The translations under genes and the position numbers were made by a program. Of a stretch of 64,000 bases of DNA, positions 4,620 through 48,092 are shown piece by piece (the first letter of the stretch is position 1; each line of letters starts with the position of its first letter). Under the pieces are notes generated by a model that was given only the letters and a program-made list of their open reading frames with translations, was not told the origin of the DNA and searched no databases. This stretch comes from Macrostomum lignano (taxonomy: Eukaryota). The DNA is taken from contig NIVC01000019.1 in assembly GCA_002269645.1 (NCBI GenBank), forward strand, positions 1,054,001 to 1,118,000, written 5' to 3'.

Positions 4620-7600
4620 GTGAGTCTGGGATTAGTGAGTGAGGGATTAGGGAGTCTGGGGTTAGGGAATGAGGGGTTAGGGAGTGAGGGATTAGAGAGT
4701 AAGAGATTAGGGAGTGTGGGATTAACGAGTGTTGGATTAGTGATTGTGGGATTAGGGAAAATGGGATTAGGGAGTGTGGAGTTCCGAATTAAGGTTGGCA
4801 GCCAAATTTCAGCTAGTTCTGAAACTAACAAAGTTATGAATGCTAAACTCTAAATCGCATTAGGGCGCAAATATTCTCACTACTCTACTGTCAGTAACAA
4901 CCAACAGACATCGCCTTTAGTCATCACGGCCTCGCCTACCCGTGCCGCCTGCAGGTTCGCGCCATTCTACTCTACGCTCGCAAATCCGAAGCCGTCGATG
5001 TCCTGCTCGCCGCCCGCAGTCTGGGCATGTTCGCGCCCGACTGGGGCTGGCTCGTGTCCGAGCAGACTCTAGAGGGCGCTATGGACTTGGACTCCGCAGC
5101 CGCCGGTAGCTCGGTGCTGCCGCAGGGTGTTGTTGGCCTCAGGCTGAGCCGCGGCTCCGAGCGGCTGCACCTGATCGATGCTGTACGCGTCATGCGCACC
5201 GGCATCGAGCGCCTGATTGAGAAGCGGTGCCGGCCCGACCCCAGCTCGGATGACTGCGAAGAGCTGCTCAAAGTGAACTCACCGAGAAGTTGCAGTGAGA
5301 AATCCGGCGGATCAATTTTCGGGCGTCGGCGACGGCGTCGGCGAAGGTCGGTGCGCAGCATCGACGACCGACGGCATCGGGAGCGGCGCAACATCGGCTC
5401 ATTCAGGTTTAACACACGCCGCTATCGACGGTCGTACTCTTGGAAAGACGTTGGCAGCGCGCTTTACGAGTGAGCTAATCTTTGATTTTTGAGTTCGCGT
5501 TCGATTCTTTGGTTGGGATTTCCAGTTCAATATGAGTGTTGGGATTTCCCGTTGGTTATGAAGGTTGGGATTTCCAGTTGGTTATGAAGGTTGGGATTTC
5601 CCGTTGGTTATGAAGGTTGGGATTTCCAGTTGGTTATGAAGGTTGGGAATTCCCGTTGGTTATAAAGGTTGGGAATTCCCGTTGGTTATGAAGGTTGGGA
5701 ATTCCCGTTGGTTATGAAGGTTGGGAATTCCCGTTGGTTATGAAGGTTGGGATTTCCAGTTGAATATGAGTGTTGGGATTTCCCGTTGGTTATAAAGGTT
5801 GGGATTTCCAGTTGAATATGAGTGTTGGGATTTCCCGTTGGTTATAAAGGTTGGGATTTCCAGTTGAATATGAGTGTTGGGATTTCCCGTTGGTTATAAA
5901 GGTTGGGATTTCTCATTGGTTATGCATTGTTTCATTTGTTTGGAACTTCCTGATTTCCAATTGACGGCAAAGGTCAACCTTTATAAAACTCACGGGATTT
6001 CCCCTTTGCACTCAGGTCGCTCGTGGCGGTGGAATTCAACGACGGTGCCACCGGCCGTGTGGCGTTCGACGCCAACGGGGACCGGCGCCACGCAGTCTAC
6101 CAGATTGTCAACGCTGACGCCACAGGCCGTCTTATCCAAGTCGGCACCTACGGCGTCCCCATCACCATCGATCCGGCTGGCCCGTCGGCCGCCAGACCTC
6201 TTCCGGGTGTCAGTATCGCTGCTGGCCGAGATGCGATCGGCGTGGGCGGCTACGTCAGCCTGTTGAATGTGTCGATGGAGCTGGTGCGCTGGCCGGGCAA
6301 CATGACCTACAGGTGGGTAGCGGCTGCCTGCATGCTCTACTTGATCCTAATCTACCTGACCCTACTCTACCTGACCATATTCTACCAGACCCTAATTTAC
6401 CTGACCCTACTCTACCTGACCCTACTCTACCTGACCATATTCTACCTGACCCTACTCTACCTGAACCTACTCTACCTGACCCTACTCTACCTGAACCTAC
6501 TCTACCTGACCCTACTCTACCTGACCCCAATCTATACCTGACCCTACTCTACCTGACCCCAATCTATACCTGACCCCAATCTATACCTGACCCTACTCTA
6601 CCTGATCCCAATCTATACCTGACCCTACTCTACCTGACCCCAATCTATACCTGACCCTACTCTACCTGACCCCAATCTATACCTGACCCTACTTTACAGC
6701 TGACCCTATTATACCTGACCCCACCCGCTCCCAACTGCGCAGGCGCCACATGAAGGACACCTGCACGCCCGGCGGCCACGGTCGCTGCTGGCGCGGCGTT
6801 GGCCGAGGCGGCGGCGGCTCCCGCGAGGTCGCCGGGGCTCCGTTCAGCTTTAAGCGCAAGACCACCCTGCGCGTGGTGACCAAACTGAGCAAACCGTTCG
6901 TGCTCAACCGGACCAAGGAGGCCAATATGAGCTGCATGTACAATCCCAATCCAGTCAATTTTAGCGGCGAAGTCGACTGCACCTGGCAGGATCCGAACTC
7001 AGGTGAGCGACTCGTGCAGGTTCCAGGATACTGGGTGCGGCATTCACCCATCCGTTTGTGTGGGGTTGGAGTGTGTGGGATTGGAGTGTGTGGGATTGGA
7101 GTGTGTGGGATTGGAGTGTGTGGGGTTGGAGTGTGTGGGATTGGAGTGTGTGGGATTGGAGTGTGTGGGATTGGAGTGTGTGGGATTGGAGTGTGTGGGA
7201 TTGGAGTGTGTGGGATTGGAGTGTGTGGGATTGGAGTGCGTGGGATTGCAGTATGTGGCATTGAAGTGTGTGGCATTGGAATATGTGGGATTGGAGTGTG
7301 TGGGATTGGAGTGTGTGGGATTGGAGTGTGTGGGATTGGAGTGTGTGGGATTGGAGTCCCACCTTCTATCTAATCTCTATCTCACCTTTTATAAAATCTC
7401 TATCTCATGTGTGGCATTGGAGTGTGTGGCATTGGAGTGTGTGGGATTTGAGTGTGTGGGATTGAAGTGTGTCGCATTGAAGTGTGTGGGGTTGGAGTGT
7501 TTGGGATTGGAGTGTGTGGGGTTGGAGTGTGTGGGATTGGAGTGTGTGGGGTTGGAGTGTGTGGGATTGGAGTGCGTGGGATTGCAGTATGTGGCATTGA

Positions 7601-10600
7601 AGTGTGTGGCATTGGAATATGTGGGATTGGAGTGTGTGGGATTGCAGTTTGTGGGATTGGAGTGTGTGGGATTGGAGTCCCACCTTCTATCTAATCTCTA
7701 TCTCACCTACTATCTAATCTCTATCTCACCTTCTATCTAATCTCTATCTCACCTTTTATAAAATCTCTATCTCATGTGTGGCATTGGAGTGTGTGGAATT
7801 GGAGTGTGTGGGATTTGAGTGTGTGGGATTGAAGTGTGTCGCATAGAAGTGTGTGGGATTGGAGTGTGTGGGATTGGAGTCCCACCTTCTATCTAATCTC
7901 TATCTCACCTACTATCTAATCTCTATCTCACCTTCTATCTAATCTCTATCTCACCTTTTATAAAATCTCTATCTCATGTGTGGCATTGGAGTGTGTGGCA
8001 TTGGAGTGTGTGGGATTTGAGTGTGTGGGATTGAAGTGTGTCGCATAGAAGTGTGTGGGGTTGGAGTGTGTGGGATTGGAGTGTGTGGGATTGGAGTGTG
8101 GGATTGGAGTGTGTGGGATTGAAGTGTGTCGCATTGAAGTGTGTGGGATTGCAGTTTGTGGGATTGCAATGTGTGGGATTGCAATGTGTGGGATTGGAGT
8201 GTTTGTCATAAACTGTTGCCAAGACAAAGAAATATAAAAAATAGCAGCATCAAAGTATAGCATATAAAGTAGCGGTATACGAATATATATTATATATTTA
8301 ACACGCTCAAAAAACAGATAACCGCTCCGACCCAGCTCGAAACTCTGATTGGACCTTGCGCCAATCCTTAACAAAAGTTTTGTCAGCAGTTTTGCAAGCG
8401 AAGCAGCGTACAGAATAAAAGCAGAAATGGCACTAATAGTTTTAACGTAGAGCAGTTTAAACACGTGCATAAAATGAATGAAGCACTGCATTCATATATT
8501 ACATCAGCTGCGACTTGTTGCTGGGGGGCTCTAGCTCAGACTGAGCTCAGTTGCTTGGAAGAGAAATGCTCTCGCTTGAAACTTCAGGCTTCAGGCAGGC
8601 AGCTGCATGGCTCATCATATCTGCGTGTTTTCATAATTTTGTTTTCAAAGCGGTGGCTTTTTTTAGAAGAAGGGTTTTTAAATTAAAAAAGCATTGCTGT
8701 ACAGAGTTGGTGAATAGTGAAACGCTGTTTGACATTATCTTTGAAAATAAATGATAAAAATAAGTTGCGGAAGCAAGCGATTAGGCTAGTTATGTGGGGG
8801 GGGGTTGGTTCTGCTGGCAAAATTTATTGACTATTACAAAGCTTTAGAATTTATTACGCTAACAAGCAAAGCGACACTTCTTCGTAGTCTTTTGTTTTAT
8901 ATCATTGAAAACCAGAATATATGAAGACAAAAGATTGCTCAGAGACCACTGCCTTGACTTGCCTACAGTCATATTTAGGAGCGCTTCTGTTGCTAAACGT
9001 ACTACTATTATTAGCACGAGAGAGTTCGAAGCGGGGCTCGGGGGGTTGCATGCTTTGACAGCCTCGGGTCAGACTACAACCAGAGTGGTGATGGCCCTGG
9101 CCTCCAGGTCGCTGTCCTCAGGCACGGAGGTCATCAGGGTCACCCCTGGCCGAAGCTGCGGCCCCGGCGCTGACGGATTTTGCTCAGCCGGCGCCGCCGC
9201 AGCCGCCGAAGGCTCAGTCGGAGTTGAAGCAGCCGCTGCCGCCTTGTCCGGACTTTCAACTTGAGCCCTGACCACCTCCACTTCGGCCGCGCCTTCGGCA
9301 GCTCCGGGCTCGCCTTGCTGAGCTCCCGACGGAGTTTCAGCCGCTGATGGCGACTTCTTTGACGACGACTTGCCGCCGCCAGAGTGTCGATGGTGCCGGC
9401 CATTGTTTGGCGGCTTCTTGCTGTTGCCGTTGCTGCCGCCAGACGCTGCCGGAGCGTCGGCCGCCGCCACCATGGCCTGCAGCTCCAGCTCCTTCTCCTC
9501 GTCTCTGGCCAGCTCGGCGTTCTTGCGCTTGCTCCAGCCTTTGTACGCCATCATGGAGATGACGGTGATGAGCAGGAAGGCCACGCACAGGCCGATGATG
9601 ATGAGGAACGTGTGCCGGGACTGACTGCCGCTGCCCGACTTCCCATTGCCGTTAGAATCGGACTGGCGTGGCTTGGGCAGGAGGCACTGCGGCCGGCTGC
9701 TCAGCACCAGCCGGTTGGGATCGAAGCCTTCCGGACACGGCTCGGACAGATTGACAGCTCCGCTGATTGTTGAACTGAAATTGAAGCTGGCCAGCGGACT
9801 CGGCGCCTGTTTCACGCTGGCTGGCAGGCTGCAGAATGCGCCTTGTTGAACCTCTTCAATGGGGTTGCCAGACAGGTCCAAGCTGGATAGAGAGGCCAAG
9901 CCGAGCAGGGCGCGCTGTCCAATGACTCGAATGTCATTATTGGCCAGGTTGAGCTGTTCCAGCCATTTCATAATGCCGAAATTGCGATCGAACAGGCACG
10001 CCAGGCTGCCGTTGCTCAGGTCCAGCTCGCGCAGGCCGGTCAGCCCGGCCAGGACGCCGTTGCTAAGCCGACGGAATCGATGACCGCTCAGGTCGAGTCG
10101 GCGAAGCTTCTGCAGCCGGTCCAGCGCGTTGGGGATTTGATCCTCGGCTAGGCGAGCGTTCACTAGGCGGAGCGTCTGGGCGATTGGCAGGGATAAATAG
10201 GTGAACTAAGTTTATGTTCTTATCTTGTTAAATCACATCATTCTGAGCGAGACACCCAACGCTCACATTCGGTGTGGTTAGTTAGCTAGGTTCCTCTAAG
10301 CCCTGGACACGCACACTCTCATCGTCAAGCAAGCCAGTGTTCACTCTGTACCTTGGCTTAGCTCAGGGTTTTTGGCCTTCTAAATGTCTGTAGGGGAGAC
10401 GTGAATCGCACAAGTCTTACCTACAGATACTAAAATAACTACAATAGATGGGCCACTCAGGCATACATACTTAGCAAAACAGCTTTCTACTTTCAGTTCA
10501 GTAGCAAAGAAGAATACATAAGCTTTTTTTATAAAATAAGGCTTATTGGTTCAGCAATAATGTACATTTAGCCAGTCCACTGAAATGTACATGGCAGCTT

Positions 10601-13600
10601 TAGGCTGGAATTCCGAGGAAGGCAATAAAATTGGGGCTGGGGAGTGTGGAAAGGCGCGGTTTGAGGGTTTCAGCTGGGGGGGTAAGAGTCAGTAAATGAG
10701 CCTTGATTTTAAAAATACATTAAAATGCTTCTGTTTAACTTACTACTGAACTAAAAGTAGCTTACACGCAAATGTGCTGAGTGGCCCATCTAGTTATTCT
10801 GTGGTTTTAACTTGGCGAATCTAACGTGTCTTTGAAGCCCATATTATTGCGGTATCAAACTTTTGGCACTTACAAAGAGCAACTCACCTCCAATTCCGTG
10901 TTATTATCGAATCGGCCGTCCAACAGCGGCTCCCAGATCTTGGCCAGGACGCCCTCCTTGGGCAGTGGCAGTACAATGCTGAGCTCGCGCAGTTTAGGCA
11001 GGCGTTGAAACGCTCCGATTTGAATGTACTGCACAATATTGCCGTCCAGTATGAGGCTGCGCAAATTCGGCATCGAGCCGAACGCGTCGTCTTCCAACTT
11101 TTTGAAATTGTTATTGGTTAGTTTGACCTCCTGCAGTGAGTCGCGAGTGACCTGCGGCAGGTCCGCCAGGTTCAGGTTGTCCAGCATGGCGCTGTCTATG
11201 GTCAGAGTTTGCAAGGACGGCAGGCGGCCCAGCCAGCTGCTGTTCAAGGTGCCAATTTTGCAGCCGCCGACAATGCTGAGCTCCTGTAGGCTGTTTGTTA
11301 AATGTGTTGGTTCTGTGAGTAAGATTTGCTGCACGCGAATTGAATGAGATTGTGGGACAGGTTTTAGTGTAGATTAATTTAGGAAAGGTTTCAGGTGGAT
11401 GGTTAATGATACACGGTTCACGATAGGGGGATACCGAAGCCCAATTTGTCATGATGAGCCAAGCAGCCCAGGCTCGATTCCAAGTGCAGTCACATTAATT
11501 TGGGGGGGGGGGTTAACCCCCAAGGCACAGTGAAGTGTACATGCCTAACGATAAATACAGTTAGGGCCGCTGTACACTCCTGTGTGAGTGTGTGCCTGTG
11601 AGTATGACTGCTCAGGGGAGTCGGCGGAATGGGCAGCAATGCCTCTCGCCGGTTGTGCGACAATGTCTCTTAAAGTGCGCCAGGGTGCACGCGCCCCCCT
11701 CCCGCCTTTAACTGGAAAAGTAAAACTGTGCTGACCGACTGACCTGTTCAACGAGGTTACGGGGGCTCCGCGCGGCATCGGGCAGCAGTTGATCAGCCTC
11801 AGCTGGACCAGCGATGGCAGGATGCCGTTCAACTCGATGGCACTGCCGCCGACTCTGTCCAGGGTGAGGCTTCGAATTCGAGCAGCAGTTGAGCTGGCTC
11901 GAATTGCCGACTTATCTGGCCAGCTGCTGAAGGTGACGTTGATCAGCGTCAGCCGAACGGTTGACTCGGACAGTCGCCTGTTGAACAGCTCCATTCCAGA
12001 CACGCTGCTGACGTCTCTGATGACGCAGTCAGCTTGACCAGGTTGGCATGTTGTGGGCTCGGCCGGTGCCAGCGGAGCTACCGATAGGAGCAAAACTAGG
12101 AGCAGATACGGGACTGGAACGCAGCTTTTAGCTGGCATTGTTTGGCTTTCGTGGGGCTGACGTCGGTTGCAGGCGTCGGATCTGGAAACGGAAAATTATG
12201 ATGCAGCAGTCAGGACGGATGATTGTTTTGCGTCCAAAGGCATGGTTTATGCTCGCACATGGTGCAATACTGTCACTGGCGCTTGGTATGAACTTGCAGC
12301 GAATGCAAAAAAGCATGACTCATCATACAGTGCAAGTTATGCATGTAGCCGGCAGTCACCGAAGTCAAGTCGTGAGTCGAACTAACTAACTGGGCGCCAG
12401 ATTTCTGTATTTTCCGTGGGACAGAACAGGGAAAGTGCAACGCACTGCAGCGCGTGGCAACACGTAGCAAATGTTGCAATAGAGAATTTGTTTGCTTGCT
12501 CTGCTGCACACAAAATACATTAATTCATTGGCTCATACATATGTATGCAGCTAATTTCTGCGATTTGGCCTCCTATTAAAGAGATATGTTTGTATACTTA
12601 GTATATACTGCATCTGCATATAGAAATTATACTAATTAATTGCAAATAGTGCTGCTGAGAGGTGAGCAGAGGAGAGCAGAGGAGAGCAGAGCAGAGGAGA
12701 GGAGAGGAGAGGAGATGAGAGGAGAGGAGAGGAGAGGAGATGAGAGGAGAGGAGAGGAGAGGAGAGGAGAGGAGAGGAGGAGAGGAGATGAGAGGAGAGG
12801 AGAGGAGAGGAGGAGAGGAGGAGAGGAGATGAGAGGAGAGGAGAGGAGAGGAGAGGAGGAGAGGAGATGAGAGGAGAGGAGAGGAGAGGAGAGGAGAGGA
12901 GAGGAGGAGAGGAGATGAGAGGAGAGGAGAGGAGAGGAGAGGAGAGGAGCGGAGGTGAGGGGAGGAGAGGGGAGGAGAGGAGAGGAGAGGAGAGGAGGAG
13001 AGGAGAGGAGAGGAGAGGAGAGGAGAGGAGAGGAGAGGAGAGGAGAGGAGAGGAGAGCAGAGCAGAGGAGGAGAGGATAGGAGATGAGAGGAGAGGAGAG
13101 GGAGGAGAGGAGAGGAGAGGAGATGAGAGGAGAGGAGATGAGAGGAGAGCAGAGGAGAGGAGGAGAGGAGAGGAGAGGAGAGGAGAGGAGAGGAGAGGGG
13201 AGGAGAGGAGAGGAGAGAAGGAAAGGGGAGAGGCGAAATCTGGCTTTTTACTTACCGAGAGCAATTGAAAACTCAATAATAATATTTGCTATCTTAGATA
13301 AGATATTTTCTCAATTGTCTCGTCCATGCTGCGCCTGTTGCATCTGTCCTACTAGAAGCCTGTCAAGCCGGTCTTCTTTTATTCTTTGTCTTCTCCCCTT
13401 TGCTCCGCCTGGCTATTCGTTTTGTAAATTGAAATGATCACTAACTAAATAATAGGTAAGGCTAGCTATCAGTATAGCTCGCTAGCACTGCATACGTATT
13501 CTGTTAACAGTAGAGCTGTGACCTGACAGTCTGGTCTATCTATATAGGTAGGCTATGCACACACTTCTCCCTCTCTCCTTGTCAGTCACTACTGAGCTGA

Positions 13601-15706: not shown

Positions 15707-15765
<59 letters not shown>

Positions 15766-15784
15766 GTGTCTGTCTGTCTGTCTG

Positions 15785-15865
<81 letters not shown>

Positions 15866-17654: not shown

Positions 17655-17724
<70 letters not shown>

Positions 17725-17807
17725 TCACCCTCACTCTCCCTCTCCCTCTCACTCTCGCTCCCTCTCCCTCTCCCTCTCCCTCTCACCCTCACTCTCCCTC
17801 TCCCTCT

Positions 17808-17852
<45 letters not shown>

Positions 17853-20800
17853 TCCCTCTCCTTCTCCCTCTCCCTCTCCCTCTCCCTCTCCCTCTCTCTC
17901 CCTCTCCCTCTCTCCCTCTCTCCCTCTCTCCCCTCTCCCTCTCTCTCTCTACCTCTCTCCCTCTCTCCCTCTCTCTCTCTAACTCTCTCCCTCTCCCTCT
18001 CCTTCTCCCTCTCCCTCTCTCTTTCCCTCTCCCTCTCCCTTTCCCTCTCCCTCTCCCTTTCCCTCTCCCTCTCCCTCTCCCTCTTCCTCTCCCTCTCCCT
18101 CTCCCTCTCACTCTCCCTCTCCCCTCTCTCTCTCTCTCTCTCTCTCTCCCTCTCCCTCTCCTTCTCCCTCTCCCTCTCCCTCTCCCTCTCCCTCTCCCTT
18201 TCCCTCTCACTCTCCCTTTCCCTCTCCCTCTCCCTCTCCCTCTTCCTCTCCCTCTCCCTCTCACTCTCGCTCTCCCTCTCACTCTCACTCTCCCTCTCCC
18301 TCTCCCTCTCCCTCTCCCTCTCCCTCTCCCTCTCCCTCTCCTCTCCCTCTCCCTCTCCCTTTCCCTCTCCCTCTCCCTCTCCCTCTCCCTCTCCCTTTGC
18401 CTCTCCCTTTCCCTCTCCTCTCCCTCTCCCTCTCCCTCTCACTCTCACTCTCCCTCTCGCTCTCCCTCTCACTCTCACTCTCCCTCTCCCTCTCCCTCTG
18501 CCTCTCCCTCTCCCTCTGCCTCTCCCTTTCCCTCTTCCTCTCCCTCTCCCTCTTCCTCTCCCTCTCCCTCTCTCCCCCTCTCCCTCTCTCTCCCTCTCCC
18601 TCTCTCCCTCTCTCCCTCTCTCCCCTCTCCCTCTCTCTCTCTACCTCTCTCCCTCTCTCCCTCTCTCTCTCTAACTCTCTCCCTATCTTCCACTCACACT
18701 CCCTCTCTCATTCTCACCTGTCTCTCCCTCGCACTCTTCCTTTTTCCATGTTTAATTTTCACTCCTTAATGAATATCTTGCCTCCTTCCCTTTGTTCATC
18801 TCTCTGTGCCCGTATCAACTAACTTTTTCAATGCGAAGAAACTTTCCATATTTGCTTTGTTAAACTTCTAATTCAATTGGCAAGAAAACACAATATGTGC
18901 CGCAGACCGGAAGGCATGCCGTAGATGGCGCATCGGCAATGCGTTTTCCTGCACTGTGCCGCAAACTTTCATCGCGGCTCCCACGGTGCGGGGGGGGGAG
19001 GCTTGAACGTCGGGACTTGACGCTCGGGCTTGAAGCAACAAACGGTCCCGCTCCGGACCGGGCCTGATCCCTAGGCCTGTCAGTTCCGCGAGAGGCTTTG
19101 ATGCATCGTTTTTCGGATTCTTGCTATCGTTTTTGCTTCAAGCTTTTTTGTCTATCCGCCGTATACAGTGCTGCTTCTGCTGCGCTGGACTGCGCTGGCC
19201 TGTGTAGAATCTCCGAAATTCATCTTTATGATTCCCGCGACTGACAAATTGCTGCTAGCGGCAAACAGCAAAGTTTTCCAAGCTGGAATTTGTTTGCCTC
19301 TGCCCGGTTTCCCATATGATTCTGCCTGCTGCTGCCTGGTGTTTCACTGTCCACGCACTGAGCTCTTTCACTGTCTCTGTTTCACCGCTCTTTCTCACCC
19401 CTCTGTCTCACCCCTCTGTCTCACCCCTCTGTCTCACCCATCTGTCTCACCCCTCTGTCTCACCCCTCTGTCTCACCCCTCTGTCTCACCCCTCTGTCTC
19501 ACCCCTCTGTCTCACCCCTCTGTCTCACCCCTCTGTCTCACCCATCTGTCTCACCCCGCTCTGTCTCACCCCTCTCTCTCACCCCTCTGTCTCACCACTC
19601 TCTCTCACTCCTCTTTGTTTGACCCCTCTCTCTCACCCCTCTGTCTCACCACTCTCTCTCATTCCTCTTTGTTTCACCCCTCTCTCTCACCCCTCTCTCT
19701 CACCCCACTGTCTCACACCTCTCTCTCTCACCCCACTGTCTCACCCCTCTCTCTCTCACCCCTCTCTCTCACCCCTCTCTGTCTCACCCCTCTCCCTCAC
19801 CCCTCTCTGTCAAACCCCTCTGTCTCGCCCTCTCTCTCTCTCCTTCCAATCTCCTTCTCTCCCTCTGTCTCCACTCTACCCAAGCCTCTCAATTCCTTCG
19901 TCAGGGATTTCTCAGCCATCTACTAAGACCATCTTTCAATCCAGTAGTTTGTCTCCACCCTCTAATACTGCATGCTTATCTCTCTCTACCGATCAACTGA
20001 CGGGTAACAAGCATAGTGTGGTTTCTGACAAGTCAAAGTCTGACATAAACTCTGATGCCGCCCCCGATGTCCGGAAAATGTCTGTTGCGACTGGCAGACA
20101 GCAGAAGATATTGTGGGCACTGACTTATAAACAGACAAATATCAAGTTTGGTATTGGCGACGGTGCACCAGCAAGTGCTTATTTAGCCGAGAGGGGCTGC
20201 GTCATGCCGACCATAAAATTGGCCATTTATTGCCAGCAGAGCTGAGAAGGGCTACTTAATAGCCGCAGCTAGGCTTCAGTGCACGCAGCCATATACTCCT
20301 ATAGACTCACTCGCTGCTTTAATCTCACTTTATAACTCTTTTTGTTATATTAGTGCTGTCCTAGCTTTTTATGTCTGCTAGATCCAATTCATGTGTTTCA
20401 TTTGGTTCTGCTATTGCACTGCCTAGCCATTTCCCCGATCTATCCTTCTCTATCTCACACCTATCTCCTATCTCACACCTATCTCCTATCTCCTATCTCA
20501 CACCTATCTCCTATCTCACACCTATCTCCTATCTCACACCTATCTCCTATCTCACACCTATCTCCTATCTCCTATCTCACACCTATCTCCTATCTCACAC
20601 CTATCTCCTATCTCACACCTATCTCCTATCTCGCACCTATCTCCTATCTCCTATCTCACACCTATCTCCTATCTCACACCTATCTCCTATCTCCTATCTC
20701 ACACCTATCTCCTATCTCACACCTATCTCCTATCTCACACCTATCTCCTATCTCGCACCTATCTCCTATCTCCTATCTCACACCTATCTCCTATCTCACA

Positions 20801-23800
20801 CCTATCTCCTATCTCACACCTATCTCCAATCTCACACCTATCTCCTATCTCACACCTATCTCCTATCTCACACCTATCTCCTATCTCCTATCTCACATCT
20901 TTCTCCTATCTCCTATCTCACATCTATCTCCTATCTCCTATCTCACACCTATCTCCTATCTCACACCTATCTCCTATCTGACACCTATCTCCTATCTCAC
21001 ATCTATCTCCTATCTCACATCTATCTCCTATCTCACATCTATCTCCTATCTTGCATCTATCTTCTATCTCGCAATCTATATCCTATTTGAGATCTGTCTT
21101 CTATCTCAAATCCATCTCGAAGATATATCTATTCGTCTACTATGTATCTATTCGCTATCTATATATCTATTATCTATCCTTCTATCTACTATCTATCTAT
21201 CTATATATCTACTATCCATCTGCTATTATTCTACCTTAAACTACCAGTGTACCAACAAACTAACCCAGCTCTCATAATGCGGGTTAGATGTCTACAATAC
21301 ATTGCATTCGCCTACAATAGCTCTGTATCCATCCAATCTTCGTAGTTCCCCTTCGTTCAAAGTTGGCCGGCCGGCAGTCGATCTGGCCGGGTTTCCGCGT
21401 ATGAATTCAGTTTGCAATATTAATCTTGCTAGCGTGTAATGTATTTGATCCCCCAATGCCCCCGGTCTCTCACCCAATCTTTTCCCAATTGCAAGGCCGC
21501 AAAGAGGTGCCGCCGCAATTGCAATCAATCCATCCCGAAGCCCTGCTTTATCTCCTGGCCCTTCAAAATCCCATGCAGCTTCTAACGGCGATATATTTAG
21601 AGGGAGAGATGGAGCGGAGATTGCGTTTGCGATTCTGCATGCTGCATTCTGAAGCAGTTTTATAATTGGCAGGTGAAGCAGAAAGCAGAGGAGGCCTTCC
21701 AGCCTCTCTCTCGGATTCTCTGTCAGGTTTCTGTTTTGGGCTCCGGCCATTTCCCCTTTTCCCTTACTAGTAAATACATTTTCCTGCCTGCCAAGCTTAT
21801 ATAGATGGGGCATCCGGTTTCTGGGGGTTTGAAAGGCTTGAAGAAGAAGAATTCTGCAGCTTGGGCTGCACAATGTCTGCCCCGAGTTCGGCCAAACCAG
21901 CCTCTTCCCTTCATCCAGTTTGGTGCCGTTAATCTGACCAGCGAGGGAGGGGCCACTGCTGCTCTATCTGTCTGCCATGACTAATGCTGCACGCCTGAGA
22001 GCTGTCATCAGTCGCGTCACGCATTCGCCTGGGCACTGCCCGCGGCCCAACCCCCACCCTCCACCCCGGATGCGAGAGCAAGTAGCCTCCATGGTTGATT
22101 GAGCAATTCAAGGTCAATTTATGCAACTTGGCCTGAAATCTAATATGCTATATTATTTGCATTTATATCATACGAGGCTACTGTTAGTAATACTTGTAGT
22201 TGCTGCATTAACTAGTTTAGAGTCGTTAACCTTTAAGATAATTTTCTTGCGGCAATTTTATTCGTACCCACTGTAAACGTACGGGCGTACACTCGTATAA
22301 CTACCTATACCATACACTCCATCTTTACATCCTTCCCTACTTCCTTCCCTACCACCTATTCTACACTCAACCCTAAACTCAACCCTACACCCAACCCTAA
22401 ACTCGACCCTACACTCAACCCTACACTCAACCCTAAACTGAACCCTACACCCAACTCGACACTCAACCCTACACCCAACCCTACACTCAACCCTACACTC
22501 AACCCTAAACTCGACCCTACACTCAATCCTAAACTCAGCCCTAAACTCGACCTCTACACTCAACCCTACACCCAACTCGACACCCAACCCTACACTCAAC
22601 CCTACACTCAACCCTACACTCAACCCTACACTCAACCCTACACCCAACCCTACACCCAACCCTACACTCAACCCTACACTCAACCCTACACCCAACCCTA
22701 CACTCAACCCTACACTCAACCCTACACTCAACCCTACACCCAACTCGACACCCAACCCTACACTCAACCCTACACTCAACCCTACACCCAACCCTACACT
22801 CAACCCTACACTCAACGCTAAACTCGACCCTACACTCAACCCTAAACTCAACCCTACACTCAACGCTAAACTCGACCCTACACTCAACCCTACACCCAAC
22901 CCTACACTCAACCCTACACTCAACCCTACACTCAACTCTACACTCAACCCTACACTCAACCCTACACTCAACCCTACACTCAACCCTACACTCAACCCTA
23001 CACTCAACCCTACACTCAACCCTACACTCAACCCTACACTCAACCCTACACCCAACTCGACACCCAACCCTACACTCAACCCTACACTCAACCCTACACC
23101 CAACCCTACACTTAACCCTACACTCAACGCTAAACTCGACCCTACACTCAACCCTAAACTCAACCCTACACTCAACGCTAAACTCGACCCTACACTCAAC
23201 CCTACACCCAACCCTACACTCAACCCTACACTCAACCCTACACTCAGCTCTACACTCAACCCTACACTCAACCCTACACTCAACCCTACACTCAACCCTA
23301 CACTCAACCCTACACTCAACCCTACACTCAACCCTACACTCAACCCTACACCCAACCCTACACTGTGCACCTAACCTTACATATAAACTTTTAACCTTAA
23401 GGCTTAAAAATGAATGCTAACCTAAAAGACTGCTACATCATGTACGAGTATAATAAAGACCCCAGTTTCAATTCTGCTTCATCTGCTTTCCCGAATGGCC
23501 CAGGCAAAGTCTACGAGTACTGCTGCTTTGGATACTGCATCGACCTGCTGCGGAGGCTCGCCAATTCCACGCCGTTCAACTACAATCTGTATCTGGTGTC
23601 AGACGGCACCATTGGCAATAAGGAGACTGTGAGTGGCATCGCCATTTCAGAAAATCGCCCTTCCAAAAAATCGCCCCTACTTAAAAGAATCGCCCTTCCA
23701 AAGAATCGCCCTTCCAAAGAATCGCCCTTCCAAAGAATCGCCCTTCCAAAGAATCGCCCTTCCAAAGAATCGCCCTTCCAAAGAATCGCCCTTCCAAAGA

Positions 23801-26379
23801 ATCGCCCTTCCAAAGAATCGCCCTTCCAAAGAATCGCCCTTCCAAAGAATCGCCCTTCCAAAGAATCGCCCTTCCAAAGAATCGCCCTTCCAAAGAATCG
23901 CCCTTCCAAAGAATCGCCCTTCCAAAGAATCGCCCTTCCAAAGAATCGCCCTTCCAAAGAATCGCCCTTCCAAAGAATCGCCCTTCCAAAGAATCGCCCT
24001 TCCAAAGAATCGCCCTTCCAAAGAATCGCCCTTCCAAAGAATCGCCCTTCCAAAGAATCGCCCTTCCAAAGAATCGCCCTTCCAAAGAATCGCCATTCCC
24101 AAGAACTACTGCACTTTTCCAGTCAGAATAATATTTTTAGTAAGTTATACACGCGCGCTACTTGCAGCAGTATTCACTAGCCAAGCAAGCAACCAACCAA
24201 ACGCAGGTGAACGGAGCGGTCAGGTGGACGGGCATTGTGGGCGACCTGTCCACGGGTCAAGCCGACCTGGCCGTGGCGCCCATGACCATCACGCCTGAGC
24301 GAAATCTGCGAGTGGCCTTCACCAAGCCGTTCAAATACCTGGGCCTGACCATTCTGGTGAAACGGGTGAGGCCTTGAGGTGGCCATTTAGCGGTTGGGTT
24401 GAATAAAGAGATGAATAGAGAAGAGTTCTCTGATTTTGCTTTAGCTAGATTAGTTAGAGCAGGGGGCTGTGTGCACCCCGGCGCACTTTAAGCGACATTG
24501 TCACACAACCGGCGAGAGACATTACCACCAAGTGCAGTACACAAGCGCGCGGATACGTACGCAGTCATACGCACAGGCACACACTCACACAGGAGTGTAC
24601 AGCGGCCCTAAATTTATTTATCTTTAGGCATGTACACTTCACTGTGCCTTGGGGGTTGGGTCTCAAGGCCGTTAATTGCACGAGCAGAGCCAAGCCGAGA
24701 TTCCAATTTAGCCCCCAATTAACCCAGTCAATTATCGCAGGCTACGGCTGTGTCAAAAATATGCTGAAATAGTCTATGGCCTGCTCTGCAGGCCATTCCG
24801 CAAGCTACGTTGGTGAATAGAATCCCAACCAGCAGTGTAGGGGTTAATGCGACTGCACTTGGAATCGAGCCTGGGCCGCTGGTACATCACCAGCAGCCTT
24901 CTCATCTCATCTATCCTACCTTATCTATGGTGAGATAGGATGAAATTTGAATGGGTTTATGGTGAGATAGGATGAGATTTGAATGGGTTTATGGTGAGAT
25001 GGGATGAGATTTGAATGGATTTACGGTGAGATGGGATGAGATTTGGCTAAGTGTATGGTGAGATGGGATGAGATTTAAATGGATTTATGATGAGATGGGA
25101 TGAGATCAATATGAGATTTGGCTGGGTTTATGGTGAGATGGGATGAGATTTAAATGGATTTATGGTGAGATGGGATGAGATCAAGATGAGATTTGAATGG
25201 GTTTATCATGAGATAGGATGAGAGTTGAATGGGTTTATGGTGAGATGGGATGAGATCAAGATGAGATTTGGCTGTGTTTATGGTGAGATGGGATGAGATT
25301 TGGCTGGGTTTATGGTGAGATAGGATGAGATCAAGATACGAATTCGGTTAAAATTAGGGTGATATTAAAATGCTAAACTTTGAATGTTTTTATGTTTAAA
25401 TTGACATCGGAGTCAGGTAAGGGTGATAATAAAATTCTATTTTTCCTGTAACAAAAATTTCCAGAAACCGCCAACCAGCAGCCTGGGCTCGTTTCTGCAG
25501 CCGTTCGAGCGCACCCTGTGGGTTCTGGTCGGCCTGTCAGTCCACGTGGTCGCCCTGGTGCTGTACCTGCTCGACAGGTTCTCCCCGCTTGGCCGGTTCA
25601 AGCTCGCCCGCAATCAGCAGGGCACAGACGAGGAGGCGCTCAACTTGTCCAGCGCCATGTGGTTTGCCTGGGGCGTCCTGTTGAACTCTGGCATCGGCGA
25701 GGGCACGCCAAGGAGCTTCTCGGCCAGGGTGCTGGGCATGGTGTGGGCCGGCTTTGCCATGATAATTGTGGCCAGCTACACCGCCAACCTGGCCGCCTTC
25801 CTGGTGCTGGACCGGCCAGGCGGACACATTTCCGGCATTGATGATGTCCGGGTGAGGCTGAGGGATGAGGCTGGTATCACTTGTTTGATAAGGCTGGTAT
25901 CACTTGTTTGATAAGGCTGGTATCACTTGTTTGATAAGGCTGGTATCACTTGTTTGATAAGGCTGGTATCACTTGTTTGATAAGGCCCTCTCACCTTGTT
26001 TGATGATGCTATATCACCTGTTTGATGAGGCTGTCTCACCTGTTTGATGAGGCTGTCCTAACTGTTTCATGAGGCTGTCTCACCTGCTTGATGAGGCTGT
26101 CCCACCTGTTTGATGAGGCTGATTCACAGCCATGAGTTAAAAGTACACGTATAAAATCAATAGATTTTTAAAAGAATTGCCTGTCGGAAAATTCAACCCT
26201 CGCCCCATTTAAAACCGATGCCGCCGCAGCTGAGAAACCCTGGCAATAATTTCACCTTTGCCACGGTGAAGAACAGCCCAGTTGAGGAGTACTTCAAGCG
26301 GCAGCTGGAATACGCCACTATGACCCGCACCATGGACCAAGACAAGAAGAAGTACTACGACGTGCAGTCAGCCATCGAT
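3915..26379 (+). CDS. GRIN1: NMDA-type ionotropic glutamate receptor subunit 1 (GluN1/NR1)-like; join(3915..4619,4955..5469,6016..6312,6743..7002,23504..23628,24207..24365,25465..25851,26230..26379), 3'-incomplete in window
   Basis: Eight exons with GT/AG boundaries and matching phases (0,2,2,1,0,0,0) give 2598 nt = 866 codons with no stop. GluN1 signatures: [58 protein letters not shown] (M1), [15 protein letters not shown] (M2, N site), [35 protein letters not shown] (M3), LRNP..ATVK..YFKRQ (S2). Confidence 0.95.
4626..4780. repeat. Degenerate about 15-bp G-rich repeat (GGGATTAGGGAGTGT), GluN1 intron 1
   Basis: Direct reading. Confidence 0.8.
4955..5469 (+). CDS. GRIN1: GluN1 exon 2: ATD, with Arg-rich insert
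   Basis: Acceptor ctgcag|GTT; [32 protein letters not shown]; donor GA|GTGAGC at 5470, phase 2. Confidence 0.9.
5510..5912. repeat. 26-bp minisatellite (GTTGGGATTTCCCGTTGGTTATGAAG), intron 2
   Basis: Direct reading. Confidence 0.9.
6016..6312 (+). CDS. GRIN1: GluN1 exon 3: end of ATD
   Basis: Acceptor ctcag|G; [34 protein letters not shown]; donor AG|GTGGGT at 6313, phase 2. Confidence 0.9.
6335..6722. repeat. 15-bp minisatellite (TACCTGACCCTACTC), intron 3
   Basis: Direct reading. Confidence 0.9.
6743..7002 (+). CDS. GRIN1: GluN1 exon 4: ATD-LBD linker and start of S1
   Basis: Acceptor gcgcag|G; [22 protein letters not shown]; donor G|GTGAGC at 7003, phase 1. Confidence 0.88.
7050..8200. 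repeat. 15-bp G-rich minisatellite (TTGGAGTGTGTGGGA) with interspersed CT-rich blocks and higher-order duplications, 5' end of intron 4
   Basis: Direct reading. Confidence 0.92.
8823..8855 (-). terminator. Candidate poly(A) signals of the LRR-TM gene
   Basis: Two AATAAA hexamers on the minus strand (TTTATT at 8823-8828 and 8850-8855), 215-245 nt past the stop codon. Confidence 0.5.
9069..10175 (-). CDS. LRR-TM gene exon 3 (LRRs, TM, cytoplasmic tail)
   Basis: Acceptor gcccag at 10178-10176; canonical LRRs, TM helix, stop at 9069. Confidence 0.92.
   Translation of the reverse strand, partial: TLRLVNARLAEDQIPNALDRLQKLRRLDLSGHRFRRLSNGVLAGLTGLRELDLSNGSLACLFDRNFGIMKWLEQLNLANNDIRVIGQRALLGLASLSSLDLSGNPIEEVQQGAFCSLPASVKQAPSPLASFNFSSTISGAVNLSEPCPEGFDPNRLVLSSRPQCLLPKPRQSDSNGNGKSGSGSQSRHTFLIIIGLCVAFLLITVISMMAYKGWSKRKNAELARDEEKELELQAMVAAADAPAASGGSNGNSKKPPNNGRHHRHSGGGKSSSKKSPSAAETPSGAQQGEPGAAEGAAEVEVVRAQVESPDKAAAAASTPTEPSAAAAAPAEQNPSAPGPQLRPGVTLMTSVPEDSDLEARAITTLVVV
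9069..12138 (-). CDS. Type I transmembrane leucine-rich-repeat protein (634 aa; signal peptide, about 13 LRRs, one TM, disordered tail, no TIR); complement(join(9069..10175,10888..11290,11744..12138)); nested in GluN1 intron 4
   Basis: Exons 395+403+1107 nt = 1905 nt splice in frame (AG|GTCAGT / cag|C phase 2; GAG|GTGAGT / cag|ACG phase 0). Signal [26 protein letters not shown]; LRRs such as [55 protein letters not shown]; [25 protein letters not shown] followed by KGWSKRK. Confidence 0.9.
10445..10792. mobile_element. MITE-like non-autonomous DNA transposon in LRR-gene intron 2
   Basis: Perfect inverted termini TAGATGGGCCACTCAG (10445-10460) / CTGAGTGGCCCATCTA (10777-10792), readable as TA TSD plus 14-bp TIR; second inverted pair 10487-10504 / 10743-10760 (17/18 match); no ORF. 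Confidence 0.7.
10888..11290 (-). CDS. LRR-TM gene exon 2 (LRRs)
   Basis: Acceptor aaacag at 11293-11291; donor GTGAGT at 10887; [33 protein letters not shown]. Confidence 0.9.
11464..11690 (+). mobile_element. Dispersed SINE-like repeat, copy A (LRR-gene intron 1)
   Basis: Clear homology to the reverse complement of 24471-24876 (e.g. CCCAGGCTCGATTCCAAGTGCAGTC, CAAGGCACAGTGAAGTGTACATGCCTAA, TAGGGCCGCTGTACACTCCTGTGTGAGTGTGTGCCTGTG). GGCTCGATTCC resembles a Pol III B box. SINE identity is inference. Confidence 0.65.
11744..12138 (-). CDS. LRR-TM gene exon 1 (signal peptide, Cys cap, first LRRs)
   Basis: ATG at 12138; donor GTCAGT at 11743. Confidence 0.85.
12655..13232. repeat. (GAGGA)n pentanucleotide microsatellite
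   Basis: Direct reading. Confidence 0.95.
14452..15002. repeat. 33-34-bp minisatellite (CATGAGTTTAGYGCCAGTTTAAGCTCGGCAGGCC)
   Basis: Direct reading; period 34 at 14531/14565. Confidence 0.9.
15684..15865. repeat. (TGTC)n microsatellite
   Basis: Direct reading. Confidence 0.95.
16575..17005. repeat. GA-rich hexamer repeat (GAGAGG/GAGAGT)n
   Basis: Direct reading. Confidence 0.9.
17655..18720. repeat. CT-rich repeat (CT)n/(CCCTCT)n/(CACTCT)n
   Basis: Direct reading; reverse complement of the 16575-17005 array type. Confidence 0.92.
19385..19835. repeat. 13-bp minisatellite (TCTCACCCCTCTG)
   Basis: Direct reading. Confidence 0.9.
20440..21230. repeat. 18-bp minisatellite (CTATCTCCTATCTCACAC), decaying to (CTAT)n
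   Basis: Direct reading. Confidence 0.9.
22335..23365. repeat. 12-bp C-rich minisatellite (CAACCCTACACT), 3' end of intron 4
   Basis: Direct reading. Confidence 0.93.
23504..23628 (+). CDS. GRIN1: GluN1 exon 5: S1
   Basis: Acceptor cccag|GC (phase 1, matches exon 4); [41 protein letters not shown]; donor GTGAGT at 23629. Confidence 0.92.
23645..24100. repeat. 16-bp near-perfect minisatellite (GAATCGCCCTTCCAAA), intron 5
   Basis: Direct reading. Confidence 0.95.
24207..24365 (+). CDS. GRIN1: GluN1 exon 6: end of S1
   Basis: Acceptor acgcag|GTG; [47 protein letters not shown]; donor GTGAGG at 24366. Confidence 0.95.
24471..24876 (-). mobile_element. Dispersed SINE-like repeat, copy B (GluN1 intron 6), about 190 bp longer internally than copy A
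   Basis: Inverted homolog of 11464-11690; blocks 24471-24515, 24562-24656 and 24844-24876 align by eye. Confidence 0.65.
24925..25335. repeat. About 32-bp minisatellite (TATGGTGAGATGGGATGAGATTTGAATGGGTT), intron 6
   Basis: Direct reading. Confidence 0.88.
25465..25851 (+). CDS. GRIN1: GluN1 exon 7: pre-M1, M1, M2 pore loop, M3
   Basis: Acceptor ttccag|AAA; near-identical to the GluN1 channel core including the N site and SYTANLAAF; donor GTGAGG at 25852. Confidence 0.97.
25862..26125. repeat. 23-bp minisatellite (GATAAGGCTGGTATCACTTGTTT), intron 7
   Basis: Direct reading. Confidence 0.88.
26230..26379 (+). CDS. GRIN1: GluN1 exon 8: first half of S2
   Basis: Acceptor ccgcag|CTG; [50 protein letters not shown]; donor GTGAGT at 26380. 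Confidence 0.93.
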
Positions 26380-40705: not shown

Positions 40706-41420
<715 letters not shown>

Positions 41421-48069: not shown

Positions 48070-48078
48070 TGGGTTCTG

Positions 48079-48091: not shown

Positions 48092-48092
48092 A

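What the first reader, a model, noticed from the sequence alone, without database searches (positions are those of the whole stretch)
6888..26280. GluN1 with a degenerate glycine-binding pocket but an intact channel pore
Seen, by ungapped local alignment to vertebrate GluN1 recalled from memory: DGKFG->DGTIG (F484->Ile, ATT 23611-23613), VKQSSVD->VKNSPVE (S688->Pro, CCA 26278-26280) and HQEPF->LSKPF (Q405->Ser, AGC 6888-6890). P516/T518/R523 (APMTITPER), the M2 Asn and SYTANLAAF are retained. Established: F484 caps the glycine site, and S688 contacts the ligand carboxylate through backbone NH and hydroxyl, both of which Pro lacks. W731/D732 lie in exons absent from this window. Inference: a GluN1 that is glycine/D-serine-independent, uses another co-agonist, or is a purely structural or constitutively primed subunit. 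The intact ORF and pore argue against simple decay.
Basis: partly seen in the sequence, partly recalled or inferred. Interest (0 to 1): 0.72.

Follow-up and report, generated by a model that had tools for sequence, protein, structure and literature searches.

The report
Flatworm GluN1 with remodelled glycine pocket
This is most of the gene for GluN1, the obligatory NMDA-receptor subunit, of the flatworm Macrostomum lignano; its glycine pocket carries changes shared with flukes and a basal tapeworm, one of which cuts glycine potency about 3,000-fold in human GluN1, so flatworm NMDA receptors probably handle their co-agonist differently.

Summary
Eight GT-AG exons (3915-26379, + strand) give an uninterrupted 866-codon reading frame for the Macrostomum lignano GluN1 orthologue. 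It has Ser at 405, Ile at 484 and Pro at 688. P516, T518, R523, the M2 Asn and SYTANLAAF are kept. No exon for W731/D732 or M4 lies in the window.

The "degenerate pocket" reading is only partly right. These are not private lesions of this gene. Non-aromatic 484 (I/V/M) is in every flatworm GluN1 examined. Pro688 is in Macrostomum, schistosomatids, Fasciola and Spirometra; Taenia-type cestodes have Ser. No non-flatworm GluN1 has either state. Two further flatworm-specific changes sit in the same site: L517M/V and Q536L. Q536 is the hinge Gln coupled to D732.

Q405S is uninformative, because most invertebrates have Glu there. The window protein breaks only 1 of 99 near-invariant GluN1 positions, so it is under constraint, not decaying.

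In human GluN1, S688P raises the glycine EC50 about 3,200-fold, whereas S688A is neutral.

Best reading: this is a conserved, phylum-level retuning of the co-agonist site that still anchors an amino acid. A ligand-independent GluN1 and a 3'-truncated gene copy are not excluded.

The parts
3915..4619 (+). Exon 1: start codon, signal-peptide-like N-terminus, first part of the amino-terminal domain (NTD)
   Evidence: ORF and Pfam ANF_receptor hit; donor GTGAGT; aligns to Schistosoma rodhaini GluN1 residues 17-181
4955..5469 (+). Exon 2: NTD, with an Arg-rich loop insertion
   Evidence: AG/GT borders and a continuous frame; the '[13 protein letters not shown]' stretch matches schistosome 'PYMWKDYATKLFR'
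6016..6312 (+). Exon 3: end of the NTD
6743..7002 (+). Exon 4: NTD-LBD linker and the start of S1; holds Ser405 (6888-6890) and F408 (6897-6899)
23504..23628 (+). Exon 5: S1 ([10 protein letters not shown] ... DGTIG); holds Ile484 (23611-23613)
24207..24365 (+). Exon 6: S1 binding loop and hinge; P516 24279-24281, M517 24282-24284, T518 24285-24287, R523 24300-24302, R526 24309-24311, L536 24339-24341
25465..25851 (+). Exon 7: M1, the M2 pore loop (Asn 25684-25686), M3 with SYTANLAAF (25774-25800), and the start of S2
26230..26379 (+). Exon 8: first part of S2 ([22 protein letters not shown]...); holds Pro688 (26278-26280) and Val689. It is followed by a GTGAGT donor at a conserved intron position
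   Evidence: Heterobilharzia has an intron at the same position
26380..64000 (+). Sequence downstream of exon 8. It holds no recognisable S2b (W731/D732), M4 or C-terminal exon, so it is either a very long satellite-filled intron or the end of a truncated copy
   Evidence: tblastn was negative with five kinds of GluN1 probe; 60% of 26.4-43.7 kb is tandem repeat

Best explanation
The window holds the first eight exons (866 codons: NTD, S1, M1-M3 and the first part of S2) of the Macrostomum lignano orthologue of GluN1, the obligatory NMDA-receptor subunit. Its co-agonist pocket is the flatworm version of that site, not a decayed one. The flatworm stem lineage replaced the aromatic lid F/Y484 by an aliphatic residue. 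It changed L517 to M/V in the P516-T518 binding loop. It replaced the hinge Gln536, which is coupled to D732, by Leu. It replaced Ser/Ala688 at the N-terminus of helix F by Pro, so the backbone NH that binds the ligand's carboxylate is lost. The residues that anchor any alpha-amino acid were kept: R523, T518 and P516 in the window, and D732 in flatworm orthologues. So were those that keep the cavity small: V689 in the window, and W731 in the orthologues. Inferred mechanism: the subunit still closes on a small amino acid, but with potency, selectivity or gating energetics very different from vertebrate GluN1. The expectation is much weaker glycine potency unless the co-evolved changes at 484, 517 and 536 compensate for P688. 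Shown here: identity, orthology, the residue states, their phyletic distribution and the constraint on the sequence. Inferred: everything about ligand and gating.
For: Identity: the exon translations are identical to UniRef M. lignano proteins. The match to GluN1 is E = 5.6e-111, against 5e-49 for GluN2B. Pfam finds ANF_receptor, Lig_chan-Glu_bd and Lig_chan. An NJ tree places the sequence in the flatworm GluN1 clade with bootstrap 89. Gene integrity: eight exons, all with AG/GT borders, and no stop in 866 codons. Constraint: only 1 of 99 positions that are at least 93% conserved among GluN1s is changed, against 0-7% in most other phyla sampled and 20% in a nematode. Distribution: aliphatic 484 and L536 are in 12 of 12 flatworm sequences and in no valid non-flatworm sequence. 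P688 is in M. lignano, Schistosoma rodhaini, two Heterobilharzia loci, Fasciola, Spirometra and two UniParc flatworm-like entries. S688 occurs only in Taenia-type cestodes. Only 6 flatworm-diagnostic positions exist in S1-S2a, and three of them (484, 517, 536) lie in the binding loop or hinge. W731 and D732 are kept in every flatworm orthologue that covers them. An AlphaFold2 model of the Heterobilharzia orthologue, which has the same S405, I484, L536 and P688, puts the Pro as the first residue of a confident helix (pLDDT about 92). Its best structural matches are GluN1 chains. Published effects: S688P 3,188-fold, S688A about 1.7-fold, S688N about 50-fold (PMC12199545); F484A about 100-fold (PMC6707325); Q536N/E/T/H 15-50-fold, with Q536 energetically coupled to D732 (bioRxiv 10.1101/2023.08.03.551817).
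Against: No functional data exist for any flatworm NMDA receptor in the literature I could search. The S2b segment with W731/D732 of this particular gene was not seen, so conservation there rests on other flatworms. Retention of R523, T518 and D732 is also compatible with purely structural or trafficking roles. Mutational effects measured in the rat or human background need not transfer, because of epistasis. The enrichment of diagnostic changes in the pocket was noticed after the fact.
Confidence: 0.45

Rival explanations
1. Ligand-independent ('constitutively primed') GluN1: the flatworm LBD adopts the active conformation without a co-agonist, so flatworm NMDA receptors are gated by glutamate alone, possibly with an auxiliary protein.
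For: P688 removes the backbone NH and the hydroxyl that hold the ligand's carboxylate. In human GluN1 it raises the glycine EC50 to about 9.4 mM. Q536L puts a hydrophobic residue at the hinge position coupled to D732. Single hydrophobic substitutions at D732 make rat GluN1 constitutively active, giving receptors gated by glutamate alone. [quoted passage not shown] C. elegans NMDA receptors can be gated by the secreted protein NRAP-1, and that paper used a putative Schistosoma haematobium homologue of NRAP-1 as a search query.
Against: R523, T518 (Ser in some flukes) and P516, and in the orthologues W731 and D732, stay conserved across Macrostomum, flukes and tapeworms. That is unexpected if nothing binds. 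No Q536L data exist. Most GluN1 mutations that lower glycine sensitivity do not yield glutamate-only currents.
Confidence: 0.25
2. Functionally ordinary glycine site: the changes at 484, 517, 526 and 536 compensate for P688, and the receptor shows normal micromolar glycine or D-serine dependence. P688 would then be a compensated pathogenic deviation.
For: The sequence is under strong purifying selection. The anchoring residues are kept. Pro at the first position of a helix is structurally tolerated, and the AlphaFold2 model keeps helix F with high confidence. Taenia-type cestodes carry S688 on the same M484/L536 background, which suggests both states at 688 are workable.
Against: Three separate positions, each costing 15- to 3,000-fold in mammalian GluN1, are changed together. 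Full restoration would need extensive compensation, for which there is no evidence.
Confidence: 0.2
3. This locus is a 3'-truncated, non-functional partial copy of GluN1 in the duplicated, repeat-rich M. lignano genome, or a mis-join of the assembly. The residue states would then reflect the functional paralogue from which it was recently copied.
For: No S2b, M4 or C-terminal exon lies in the 37.6 kb after exon 8. In Heterobilharzia and Fasciola the homologous intron is only about 2-6 kb. A young LTR retrotransposon and an unrelated same-strand ORF lie downstream. All three M. lignano database models stop at or before this exon, and a second model (P0055) reads partly out of frame. A search for an M. 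lignano C-terminal fragment found none.
Against: The reading frame is unbroken over 866 codons with eight canonical splice junctions, and only 1 of 99 invariant positions is changed. Exon 8 ends in a strong GTGAGT donor at a conserved intron position. Intron 4 is already 16.5 kb, and 60% of the downstream DNA is satellite, so a giant intron is plausible. The protein search is word-indexed and returned no hit longer than 790 aa, so its negative result is weak. This rival does not affect the phylum-level finding.
Confidence: 0.15
4. The substitutions are base-calling or assembly errors.
For: None beyond the general error rate of repeat-rich assemblies.
Against: Two database gene models for M. 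lignano (P0001, P0002) show the same VKNSPVE, and two (P0001, P0055) the same DGTIG. The same or equivalent residues occur in independently sequenced Schistosoma, Heterobilharzia, Fasciola, Echinostoma and Spirometra genomes.
Confidence: 0.01

Closest known systems
Vertebrate GluN1 (GRIN1; solved in many NMDA-receptor structures such as 8hdk, 7saa, 6mm9)
   Same: It has the same domain order and about 56% identity over S1-M3-S2a. P516, T518, R523, V689, the M2 Asn and SYTANLAAF are identical.
   Different: Position 484 is Ile, not Phe. Position 517 is Met, not Leu. Position 526 is Arg, not Tyr. Position 536 is Leu, not Gln. Position 688 is Pro, not Ser. Position 405 is Ser, not Gln. The NTD carries an Arg-rich loop insertion. 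The C-terminal fifth was not seen.
Other flatworm GluN1 orthologues (Schistosoma rodhaini CAH8655530.1, Heterobilharzia americana, Fasciola hepatica THD20762.1, Spirometra erinaceieuropaei VZI51863.1)
   Same: They form one clade with the window protein (bootstrap 89). They share S405, aliphatic 484, M/V517, R526, L536 and P688. They share intron positions around the S2a exon. Heterobilharzia also has an antisense LRR gene in the homologous intron.
   Different: The window protein is the least derived of the clade: 1 of 99 invariant positions is changed, against about 4% in the parasites. Its residue 410 is Leu. The intron after S2a is at least 37.6 kb or missing, against 2-6 kb in flukes.
Human GRIN1 p.Ser688Pro (ClinVar 429761), a disease-associated variant
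   Same: It is the same residue change at the same position. It removes the backbone NH and the hydroxyl at the N-terminus of helix F.
   Different: In the human background it is damaging: the glycine EC50 goes from 2.96 uM to 9,436 uM and surface expression falls by about 62% (PMC12199545). In flatworms Pro is the conserved wild-type state, together with changes at 484, 517 and 536.
Nematode GluN1 (NMR-1 type; Toxocara, Anisakis and other nematode orthologues)
   Same: It is another protostome lineage whose GluN1 departs from the canonical site at both 536 (His) and 688 (Asn). C. elegans receptors are functional, and their gating depends strongly on the secreted protein NRAP-1 (PMC11531325).
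   Different: Nematodes keep an aromatic residue (Tyr) at 484 and a residue with a backbone NH at 688. Their GluN1 is much more divergent overall: 20% of invariant positions are changed.
Engineered rat GluN1 D732L/F, constitutively active, giving glutamate-only NMDA receptors (Seljeset et al., bioRxiv 10.1101/2023.08.03.551817)
   Same: It shows that a single hydrophobic substitution in the D732-Q536-helix alphaI network can remove the need for glycine. The flatworm Q536L lies in that network.
   Different: Flatworm orthologues keep D732. The hydrophobic change is at 536, which has not been tested with Leu.

Membership tests
GluN1 (NMDA1 class of ionotropic glutamate receptors) | Closest relatives by sequence and tree are GluN1, not GluN2, GluN3 or the AMPA/kainate/delta/phi (AKDF) receptors | tested here: met
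   PDB phmmer gives GluN1 5.6e-111 against GluN2B 5e-49. The named hits are GluN1 at 49-68% identity. In the NJ tree the sequence lies inside the GluN1 clade, apart from five non-GluN1 outgroups.
GluN1 (NMDA1 class of ionotropic glutamate receptors) | Architecture NTD - S1 - M1-M2-M3 - S2 - M4 - C-terminal domain | tested here: inconclusive
   ANF_receptor, Lig_chan-Glu_bd and Lig_chan are present in the 866 aa. The second part of S2, M4 and the C-terminal domain are not in the window.
GluN1 (NMDA1 class of ionotropic glutamate receptors) | Pore: Asn at the M2 N-site, and SYTANLAAF in M3 | tested here: met
   AAC at 25684-25686 and SYTANLAAF at 25774-25800. Asn is found in 188 of 193 GluN1 sequences.
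GluN1 (NMDA1 class of ionotropic glutamate receptors) | Alpha-amino-acid anchors in S1: P516 carbonyl, T518, R523 | tested here: met
   APMTITPER, codons 24279-24302.
GluN1 (NMDA1 class of ionotropic glutamate receptors) | D732 (binds the ligand amine) and W731 (excludes glutamate) | not testable with these tools
   The exon is absent from the window. AFIWDS is kept in every flatworm orthologue that covers it.
GluN1 (NMDA1 class of ionotropic glutamate receptors) | Aromatic lid at 484 (F or Y) | tested here: not met
   Ile (ATT 23611-23613). All 120 valid non-flatworm sequences have F or Y.
GluN1 (NMDA1 class of ionotropic glutamate receptors) | A residue with a free backbone NH at 688 (Ser or Ala in 143 of 161 sequences) | tested here: not met
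   Pro (CCA 26278-26280).
GluN1 (NMDA1 class of ionotropic glutamate receptors) | Hinge Gln536, coupled to D732 | tested here: not met
   Leu (CTG 24339-24341). Non-flatworm sequences have Q 138, H 9, K 1, E 1.
GluN1 (NMDA1 class of ionotropic glutamate receptors) | Functions as the glycine/D-serine-binding obligatory partner of GluN2 | not testable with these tools
   This needs electrophysiology or ligand binding. No flatworm data were found.
Platyhelminth GluN1 clade (defined here) | Aliphatic 484, M/V517, R526 and L536 (with P688, except in Taenia-type cestodes), and monophyly | tested here: met
   The window has I484, M517, R526, L536 and P688. The clade has bootstrap 89. Twelve of 12 flatworm sequences share the 484, 517, 526 and 536 states.
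Pseudogene or decaying copy | Stop codons, frameshifts, lost splice sites, or an excess of changes at invariant positions | tested here: not met
   There is no stop in 866 codons, and all 7 acceptors and 8 donors are canonical. One of 99 invariant positions is changed. Absence of the 3' exons leaves truncation open.

The most novel reading that the evidence does not exclude
A whole animal phylum (Platyhelminthes) has abandoned classical high-affinity glycine/D-serine co-agonism at NMDA receptors. Its GluN1 either is constitutively primed, giving glutamate-only gating, or has been re-tuned to a different small-molecule co-agonist or to a millimolar-range sensor. This came about through a co-evolved set of changes (aliphatic 484, M/V517, L536, P688) that includes a residue pathogenic in humans.
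Probability: 0.35. Interest if true: 0.78.

Novelty: new variant of a known kind. Interest (0 to 1): 0.55.

Why it matters
Glycine or D-serine co-agonism is treated as a defining property of NMDA receptors. How old and how universal it is remains open, because very few invertebrate receptors have been recorded.

This window points to a natural, phylum-wide GluN1 variant. Its wild-type residue at 688 equals a human disease variant that lowers glycine potency about 3,000-fold. It comes with changes at the aromatic lid and at the hinge Gln that couples to D732. That gives three things:
- a ready-made natural experiment on what the co-agonist site is for;
- a concrete set of four to five residues to swap between rat and flatworm subunits, to study compensation and gating energetics;
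- a pharmacologically distinct site in the NMDA receptors of schistosomes, liver flukes and some tapeworms.

If recombinant flatworm receptors turn out to have ordinary glycine dependence, the case would still be a clear example of a compensated pathogenic deviation in a well-understood binding site.

Tried and rejected
1. I looked for the missing S2b, M4 and C-terminal exons in the window. Nothing turned up beyond exon 8.
2. I looked for an M. lignano C-terminal GluN1 fragment with a chimeric S2a+S2b-M4 query. Only short fragments from other taxa came back.
3. I tried to fetch DNA for the M. lignano database proteins and for UniParc entry P0371. None is on record.
4. I searched the literature for any description of flatworm GluN1 binding-site residues or of flatworm NMDA-receptor function. 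Nothing was found.
5. I considered Q405S as a meaningful lesion and rejected it. Position 405 is Glu in 77 of 108 GluN1 sequences and Ser in an oyster, a crinoid and a jellyfish.
6. I considered that S688 is simply variable in invertebrates. This is true for Ala, which is functionally neutral in human GluN1, but Pro is confined to flatworms.
7. I considered the two non-flatworm 'Val484' calls. They are artefacts of gene models that lack the segment.
8. I considered a conserved nested LRR gene as a synteny marker. It is present in Heterobilharzia but absent from the short homologous intron of Fasciola, and the protein similarity is limited to the LRRs.
9. I did not find a canonical (F/Y484, Q536, S688) GluN1 paralogue from any named flatworm. 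Unnamed database entries cannot be assigned to a taxon.
Full report
WHAT IS THERE. The window is genomic DNA of the free-living flatworm Macrostomum lignano. Translations of its exons are identical, apart from read-through junk, to three UniRef proteins of that species: A0A1I8IU12, A0A1I8F3N2 and A0A1I8FBK0. I reconstructed eight + strand exons:
- E1 3915-4619
- E2 4955-5469
- E3 6016-6312
- E4 6743-7002
- E5 23504-23628
- E6 24207-24365
- E7 25465-25851
- E8 26230-26379

Every junction is AG/GT, and most donors read GTGAG. The joined sequence is an open 866-codon frame. Pfam finds ANF_receptor, Lig_chan-Glu_bd and Lig_chan. The protein aligns with residues 17-788 of the 949-residue Schistosoma rodhaini GluN1.

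Against all solved structures the best matches are GluN1 chains (E = 5.6e-111), far ahead of GluN2B (5e-49). In a neighbour-joining tree with five non-GluN1 outgroups it sits inside GluN1, within a flatworm clade of bootstrap 89. So this is the M. lignano GluN1 orthologue, lacking roughly its last 160 codons.

THE OBSERVATION. The gapless HMMER alignment to natively numbered GluN1 chains confirms that they correspond to Q405, F484 and S688. P516, T518, R523, V689, the M2 Asn (25684-25686) and SYTANLAAF (25774-25800) are retained. No exon encoding AFIWDS (W731/D732) or M4 exists in the remaining 37.6 kb on either strand.

HOW UNUSUAL THE RESIDUES ARE. I collected GluN1 sequences from three word-indexed searches and one exhaustive HMMER search of 1.84 billion cluster representatives. 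I aligned the 265 that are at least 42% identical to a vertebrate GluN1.
- Position 484 is F (67) or Y (53) in every non-flatworm sequence that contains the segment. Two apparent Val calls are gene models that lack the segment.
- All twelve flatworm sequences have I, V or M at 484.
- Position 688 is A (74) or S (69), with a few N (nematodes), Y, F and G.
- Pro at 688 occurs in M. lignano, Schistosoma rodhaini, two Heterobilharzia americana loci, Fasciola hepatica, Spirometra erinaceieuropaei and two flatworm-like UniParc entries. One further 'P' call (P0064) is a misaligned fragment.
- Taenia crassiceps and a related cestode entry have Ser at 688 on the same background, most simply a reversal.
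- The Fasciola genomic exon missing from its gene model reads DGQIG ... APVSITPER ... KPFKYLG.
- Position 405 is uninformative. It is Gln mainly in vertebrates and Glu in 77 of 108 sequences. It is Ser in flatworms but also in an oyster, a crinoid and a jellyfish.

I screened for positions where the flatworm residues are essentially absent from all other GluN1. Only six such positions fall in the S1-S2a region covered by the window:
- F484 to I/V/M
- L517 to M/V
- Y526 to R
- Q536 to L
- two positions in the variable loop after 484

L517 lies between the ligand-contacting P516 and T518. Q536 is the hinge glutamine. Seljeset et al. showed that it moves toward A734 and D732 on glycine binding and is energetically coupled to D732 (coupling energy 7.4 kJ/mol). 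Substituting it (N, E, T or H) lowers glycine potency 15- to 50-fold.

Leu at 536 is found in 12 of 12 flatworm sequences and in none of 149 others (Q 138, H 9, K 1, E 1). The His cases include all the nematode sequences (Toxocara, Anisakis, Oesophagostomum), which combine H536 with N688; a few unnamed or non-nematode sequences also have His. So the flatworm-specific changes cluster in the co-agonist binding and closure machinery. By a rough Poisson estimate, three of about 16 diagnostic positions falling among about a dozen pocket or hinge residues is unlikely by chance. This was noticed after the fact and should be weighted accordingly.

DECAY OR CONSERVED STATE. Among 99 alignment columns that are at least 93% conserved across GluN1s, the window protein deviates at one. 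The comparison values are:
- 0-7% for brachiopod, mollusc, rotifer, arthropod, cnidarian and echinoderm sequences
- about 4% for parasitic flatworms
- 20% for a nematode

Macrostomum shares the pocket states with the parasitic flatworms. From background knowledge rather than any tool result, Macrostomorpha branched off early within flatworms, so the states are old and maintained. This is a conserved lineage-specific configuration, not degeneration. An AlphaFold2 model of the Heterobilharzia orthologue has the same S405, I484, L536 and P688. It places the Pro as the first residue of a confidently predicted helix (pLDDT about 92), where Pro is structurally tolerated. Its best structural matches are all GluN1 chains.

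WHAT THE CHANGES SHOULD DO. Published mutagenesis gives direct yardsticks.
- Human GluN1 S688P, a ClinVar variant, raises the glycine EC50 from 2.96 uM to 9,436 uM (3,188-fold) and lowers surface expression by about 62%.
- S688A, the common invertebrate state, is neutral (5.0 uM). S688N, the nematode state, gives 148 uM (PMC12199545).
- S688Y gives shifts of about 1,000-2,000-fold (PMC7596085).
- F484A lowers glycine affinity by about two orders of magnitude (PMC6707325).
- Q536 substitutions cost 15-50-fold.

Taken at face value, the flatworm combination would push glycine potency far out of the physiological range. Against that, the residues that anchor any alpha-amino acid are strictly conserved in flatworms: R523, T518 or S518, P516 and D732. 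So are those that keep the cavity small, V689 and W731. That argues that something still binds.

My best reading (confidence 0.45) is a co-agonist site that still closes on a small amino acid but with strongly altered potency, selectivity or gating energetics. The co-evolved 484, 517 and 536 changes would partly compensate for P688.

The main rivals are:
- a ligand-independent, constitutively primed GluN1 (0.25). Its precedents are rat D732L/F receptors gated by glutamate alone, reports that Drosophila and Aplysia receptors respond to single ligands, and gating of nematode receptors by NRAP-1;
- full compensation, giving ordinary glycine dependence (0.2).

IS THIS LOCUS A COMPLETE GENE? This cannot be settled here. 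Exon 8 ends in a strong donor at an intron position shared with Heterobilharzia, so the gene is built to continue. The next 37.6 kb hold only the following:
- satellites, which make up 60% of 26.4-43.7 kb
- a young Ty3/gypsy element
- an unrelated same-strand ORF

In flukes the homologous intron is only 2-6 kb. A giant satellite-bloated intron is plausible, since intron 4 is already 16.5 kb. A 3'-truncated copy or an assembly mis-join is also possible; I give that 0.15. Either way, the residue states are those of a sequence under GluN1-type constraint, and the phylum-level pattern does not depend on this locus.

COMPARISON WITH WHAT IS KNOWN, AND NOVELTY. By sequence, tree, architecture and pore, this is a GluN1. 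It fails three features that otherwise hold across the family: the aromatic 484, Gln536, and a residue at 688 with a backbone NH. The closest functional analogies are the human S688P variant, nematode NMR-1 (H536/N688, NRAP-1-dependent) and the engineered D732L/F subunits.

Five literature searches of the held library found no description of the flatworm GluN1 binding site and no recording from any flatworm NMDA receptor. I therefore rate it a new variant of a known kind, of moderate-to-good interest (0.55). It is real, conserved and testable, and it bears on how universal NMDA co-agonism is. The functional consequence remains wholly inferred.

Noticed in passing
window 9069-12138 (minus strand), inside GluN1 intron 4 (7003-23503); compare L001 28680-29912: An antisense gene for a leucine-rich-repeat protein is nested in the 16.5-kb intron. 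It has a likely N-terminal signal peptide and a single transmembrane segment, and shows three ORF blocks (11545-12138, 10870-11334, 9069-10163) with Pfam LRR_8. The Heterobilharzia americana GluN1 gene carries an antisense LRR_8 gene in the homologous 19.4-kb intron. The two proteins are only 29-34% identical, and only over the LRRs. Fasciola's homologous intron is 2.6 kb and has no such gene.
   Followed up: partly
window 43696-48317: A Ty3/gypsy LTR retrotransposon with two 225-nt LTRs that are 100% identical (43696-43920 and 48093-48317). It has an uninterrupted 1339-aa gag-pol ORF on the minus strand (44050-48069; RT, RNase H, integrase). It sits inside a 12-nt satellite array, and the identical LTRs suggest a recent insertion.
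   Followed up: partly
whole window, e.g. 36222-40226, 31812-33859, 61479-63999, 56907-59035: About 41.5% of the 64 kb is high-scoring tandem repeat. Examples are a 34-nt unit x118, a 39-nt unit x52 and a 42-nt unit x60. These arrays fill the introns and generate most of the long spurious ORFs in the six-frame list.
   Followed up: partly
window 49314-51216 (+ strand): A cysteine-rich ORF with repeated CxxC motifs (e.g. CPHCFGVGYVNCRRC ... CPACRGRIGVECPECAGSG). A probable second exon lies at about 50863-51216, on the same strand as GluN1 and downstream of it. Pfam gives no hit. From memory it resembles SSUH2-type proteins; this was not tested.
   Followed up: no
window 5290-5440 (within exon 2): An Arg-rich, low-complexity insertion ([24 protein letters not shown]...) in an NTD loop. 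The schistosome protein has an unrelated sequence of similar length at this place.
   Followed up: no
alignment of nematode GluN1 sequences (P0257, P0078, P0091, P0357): Nematode GluN1s combine H536 with N688 while keeping Y484. This is a second, independent departure from the canonical co-agonist site in protostomes.
   Followed up: partly
protein P0055 (M. lignano A0A1I8FBK0) compared with window exons 6 and 7: A second M. lignano GluN1 gene model reads parts of the S1c and M2-M3 exons in a shifted frame and differs slightly in S2a ([18 protein letters not shown]). It is either a frameshifted paralogue or indel errors in an older long-read assembly.
   Followed up: no
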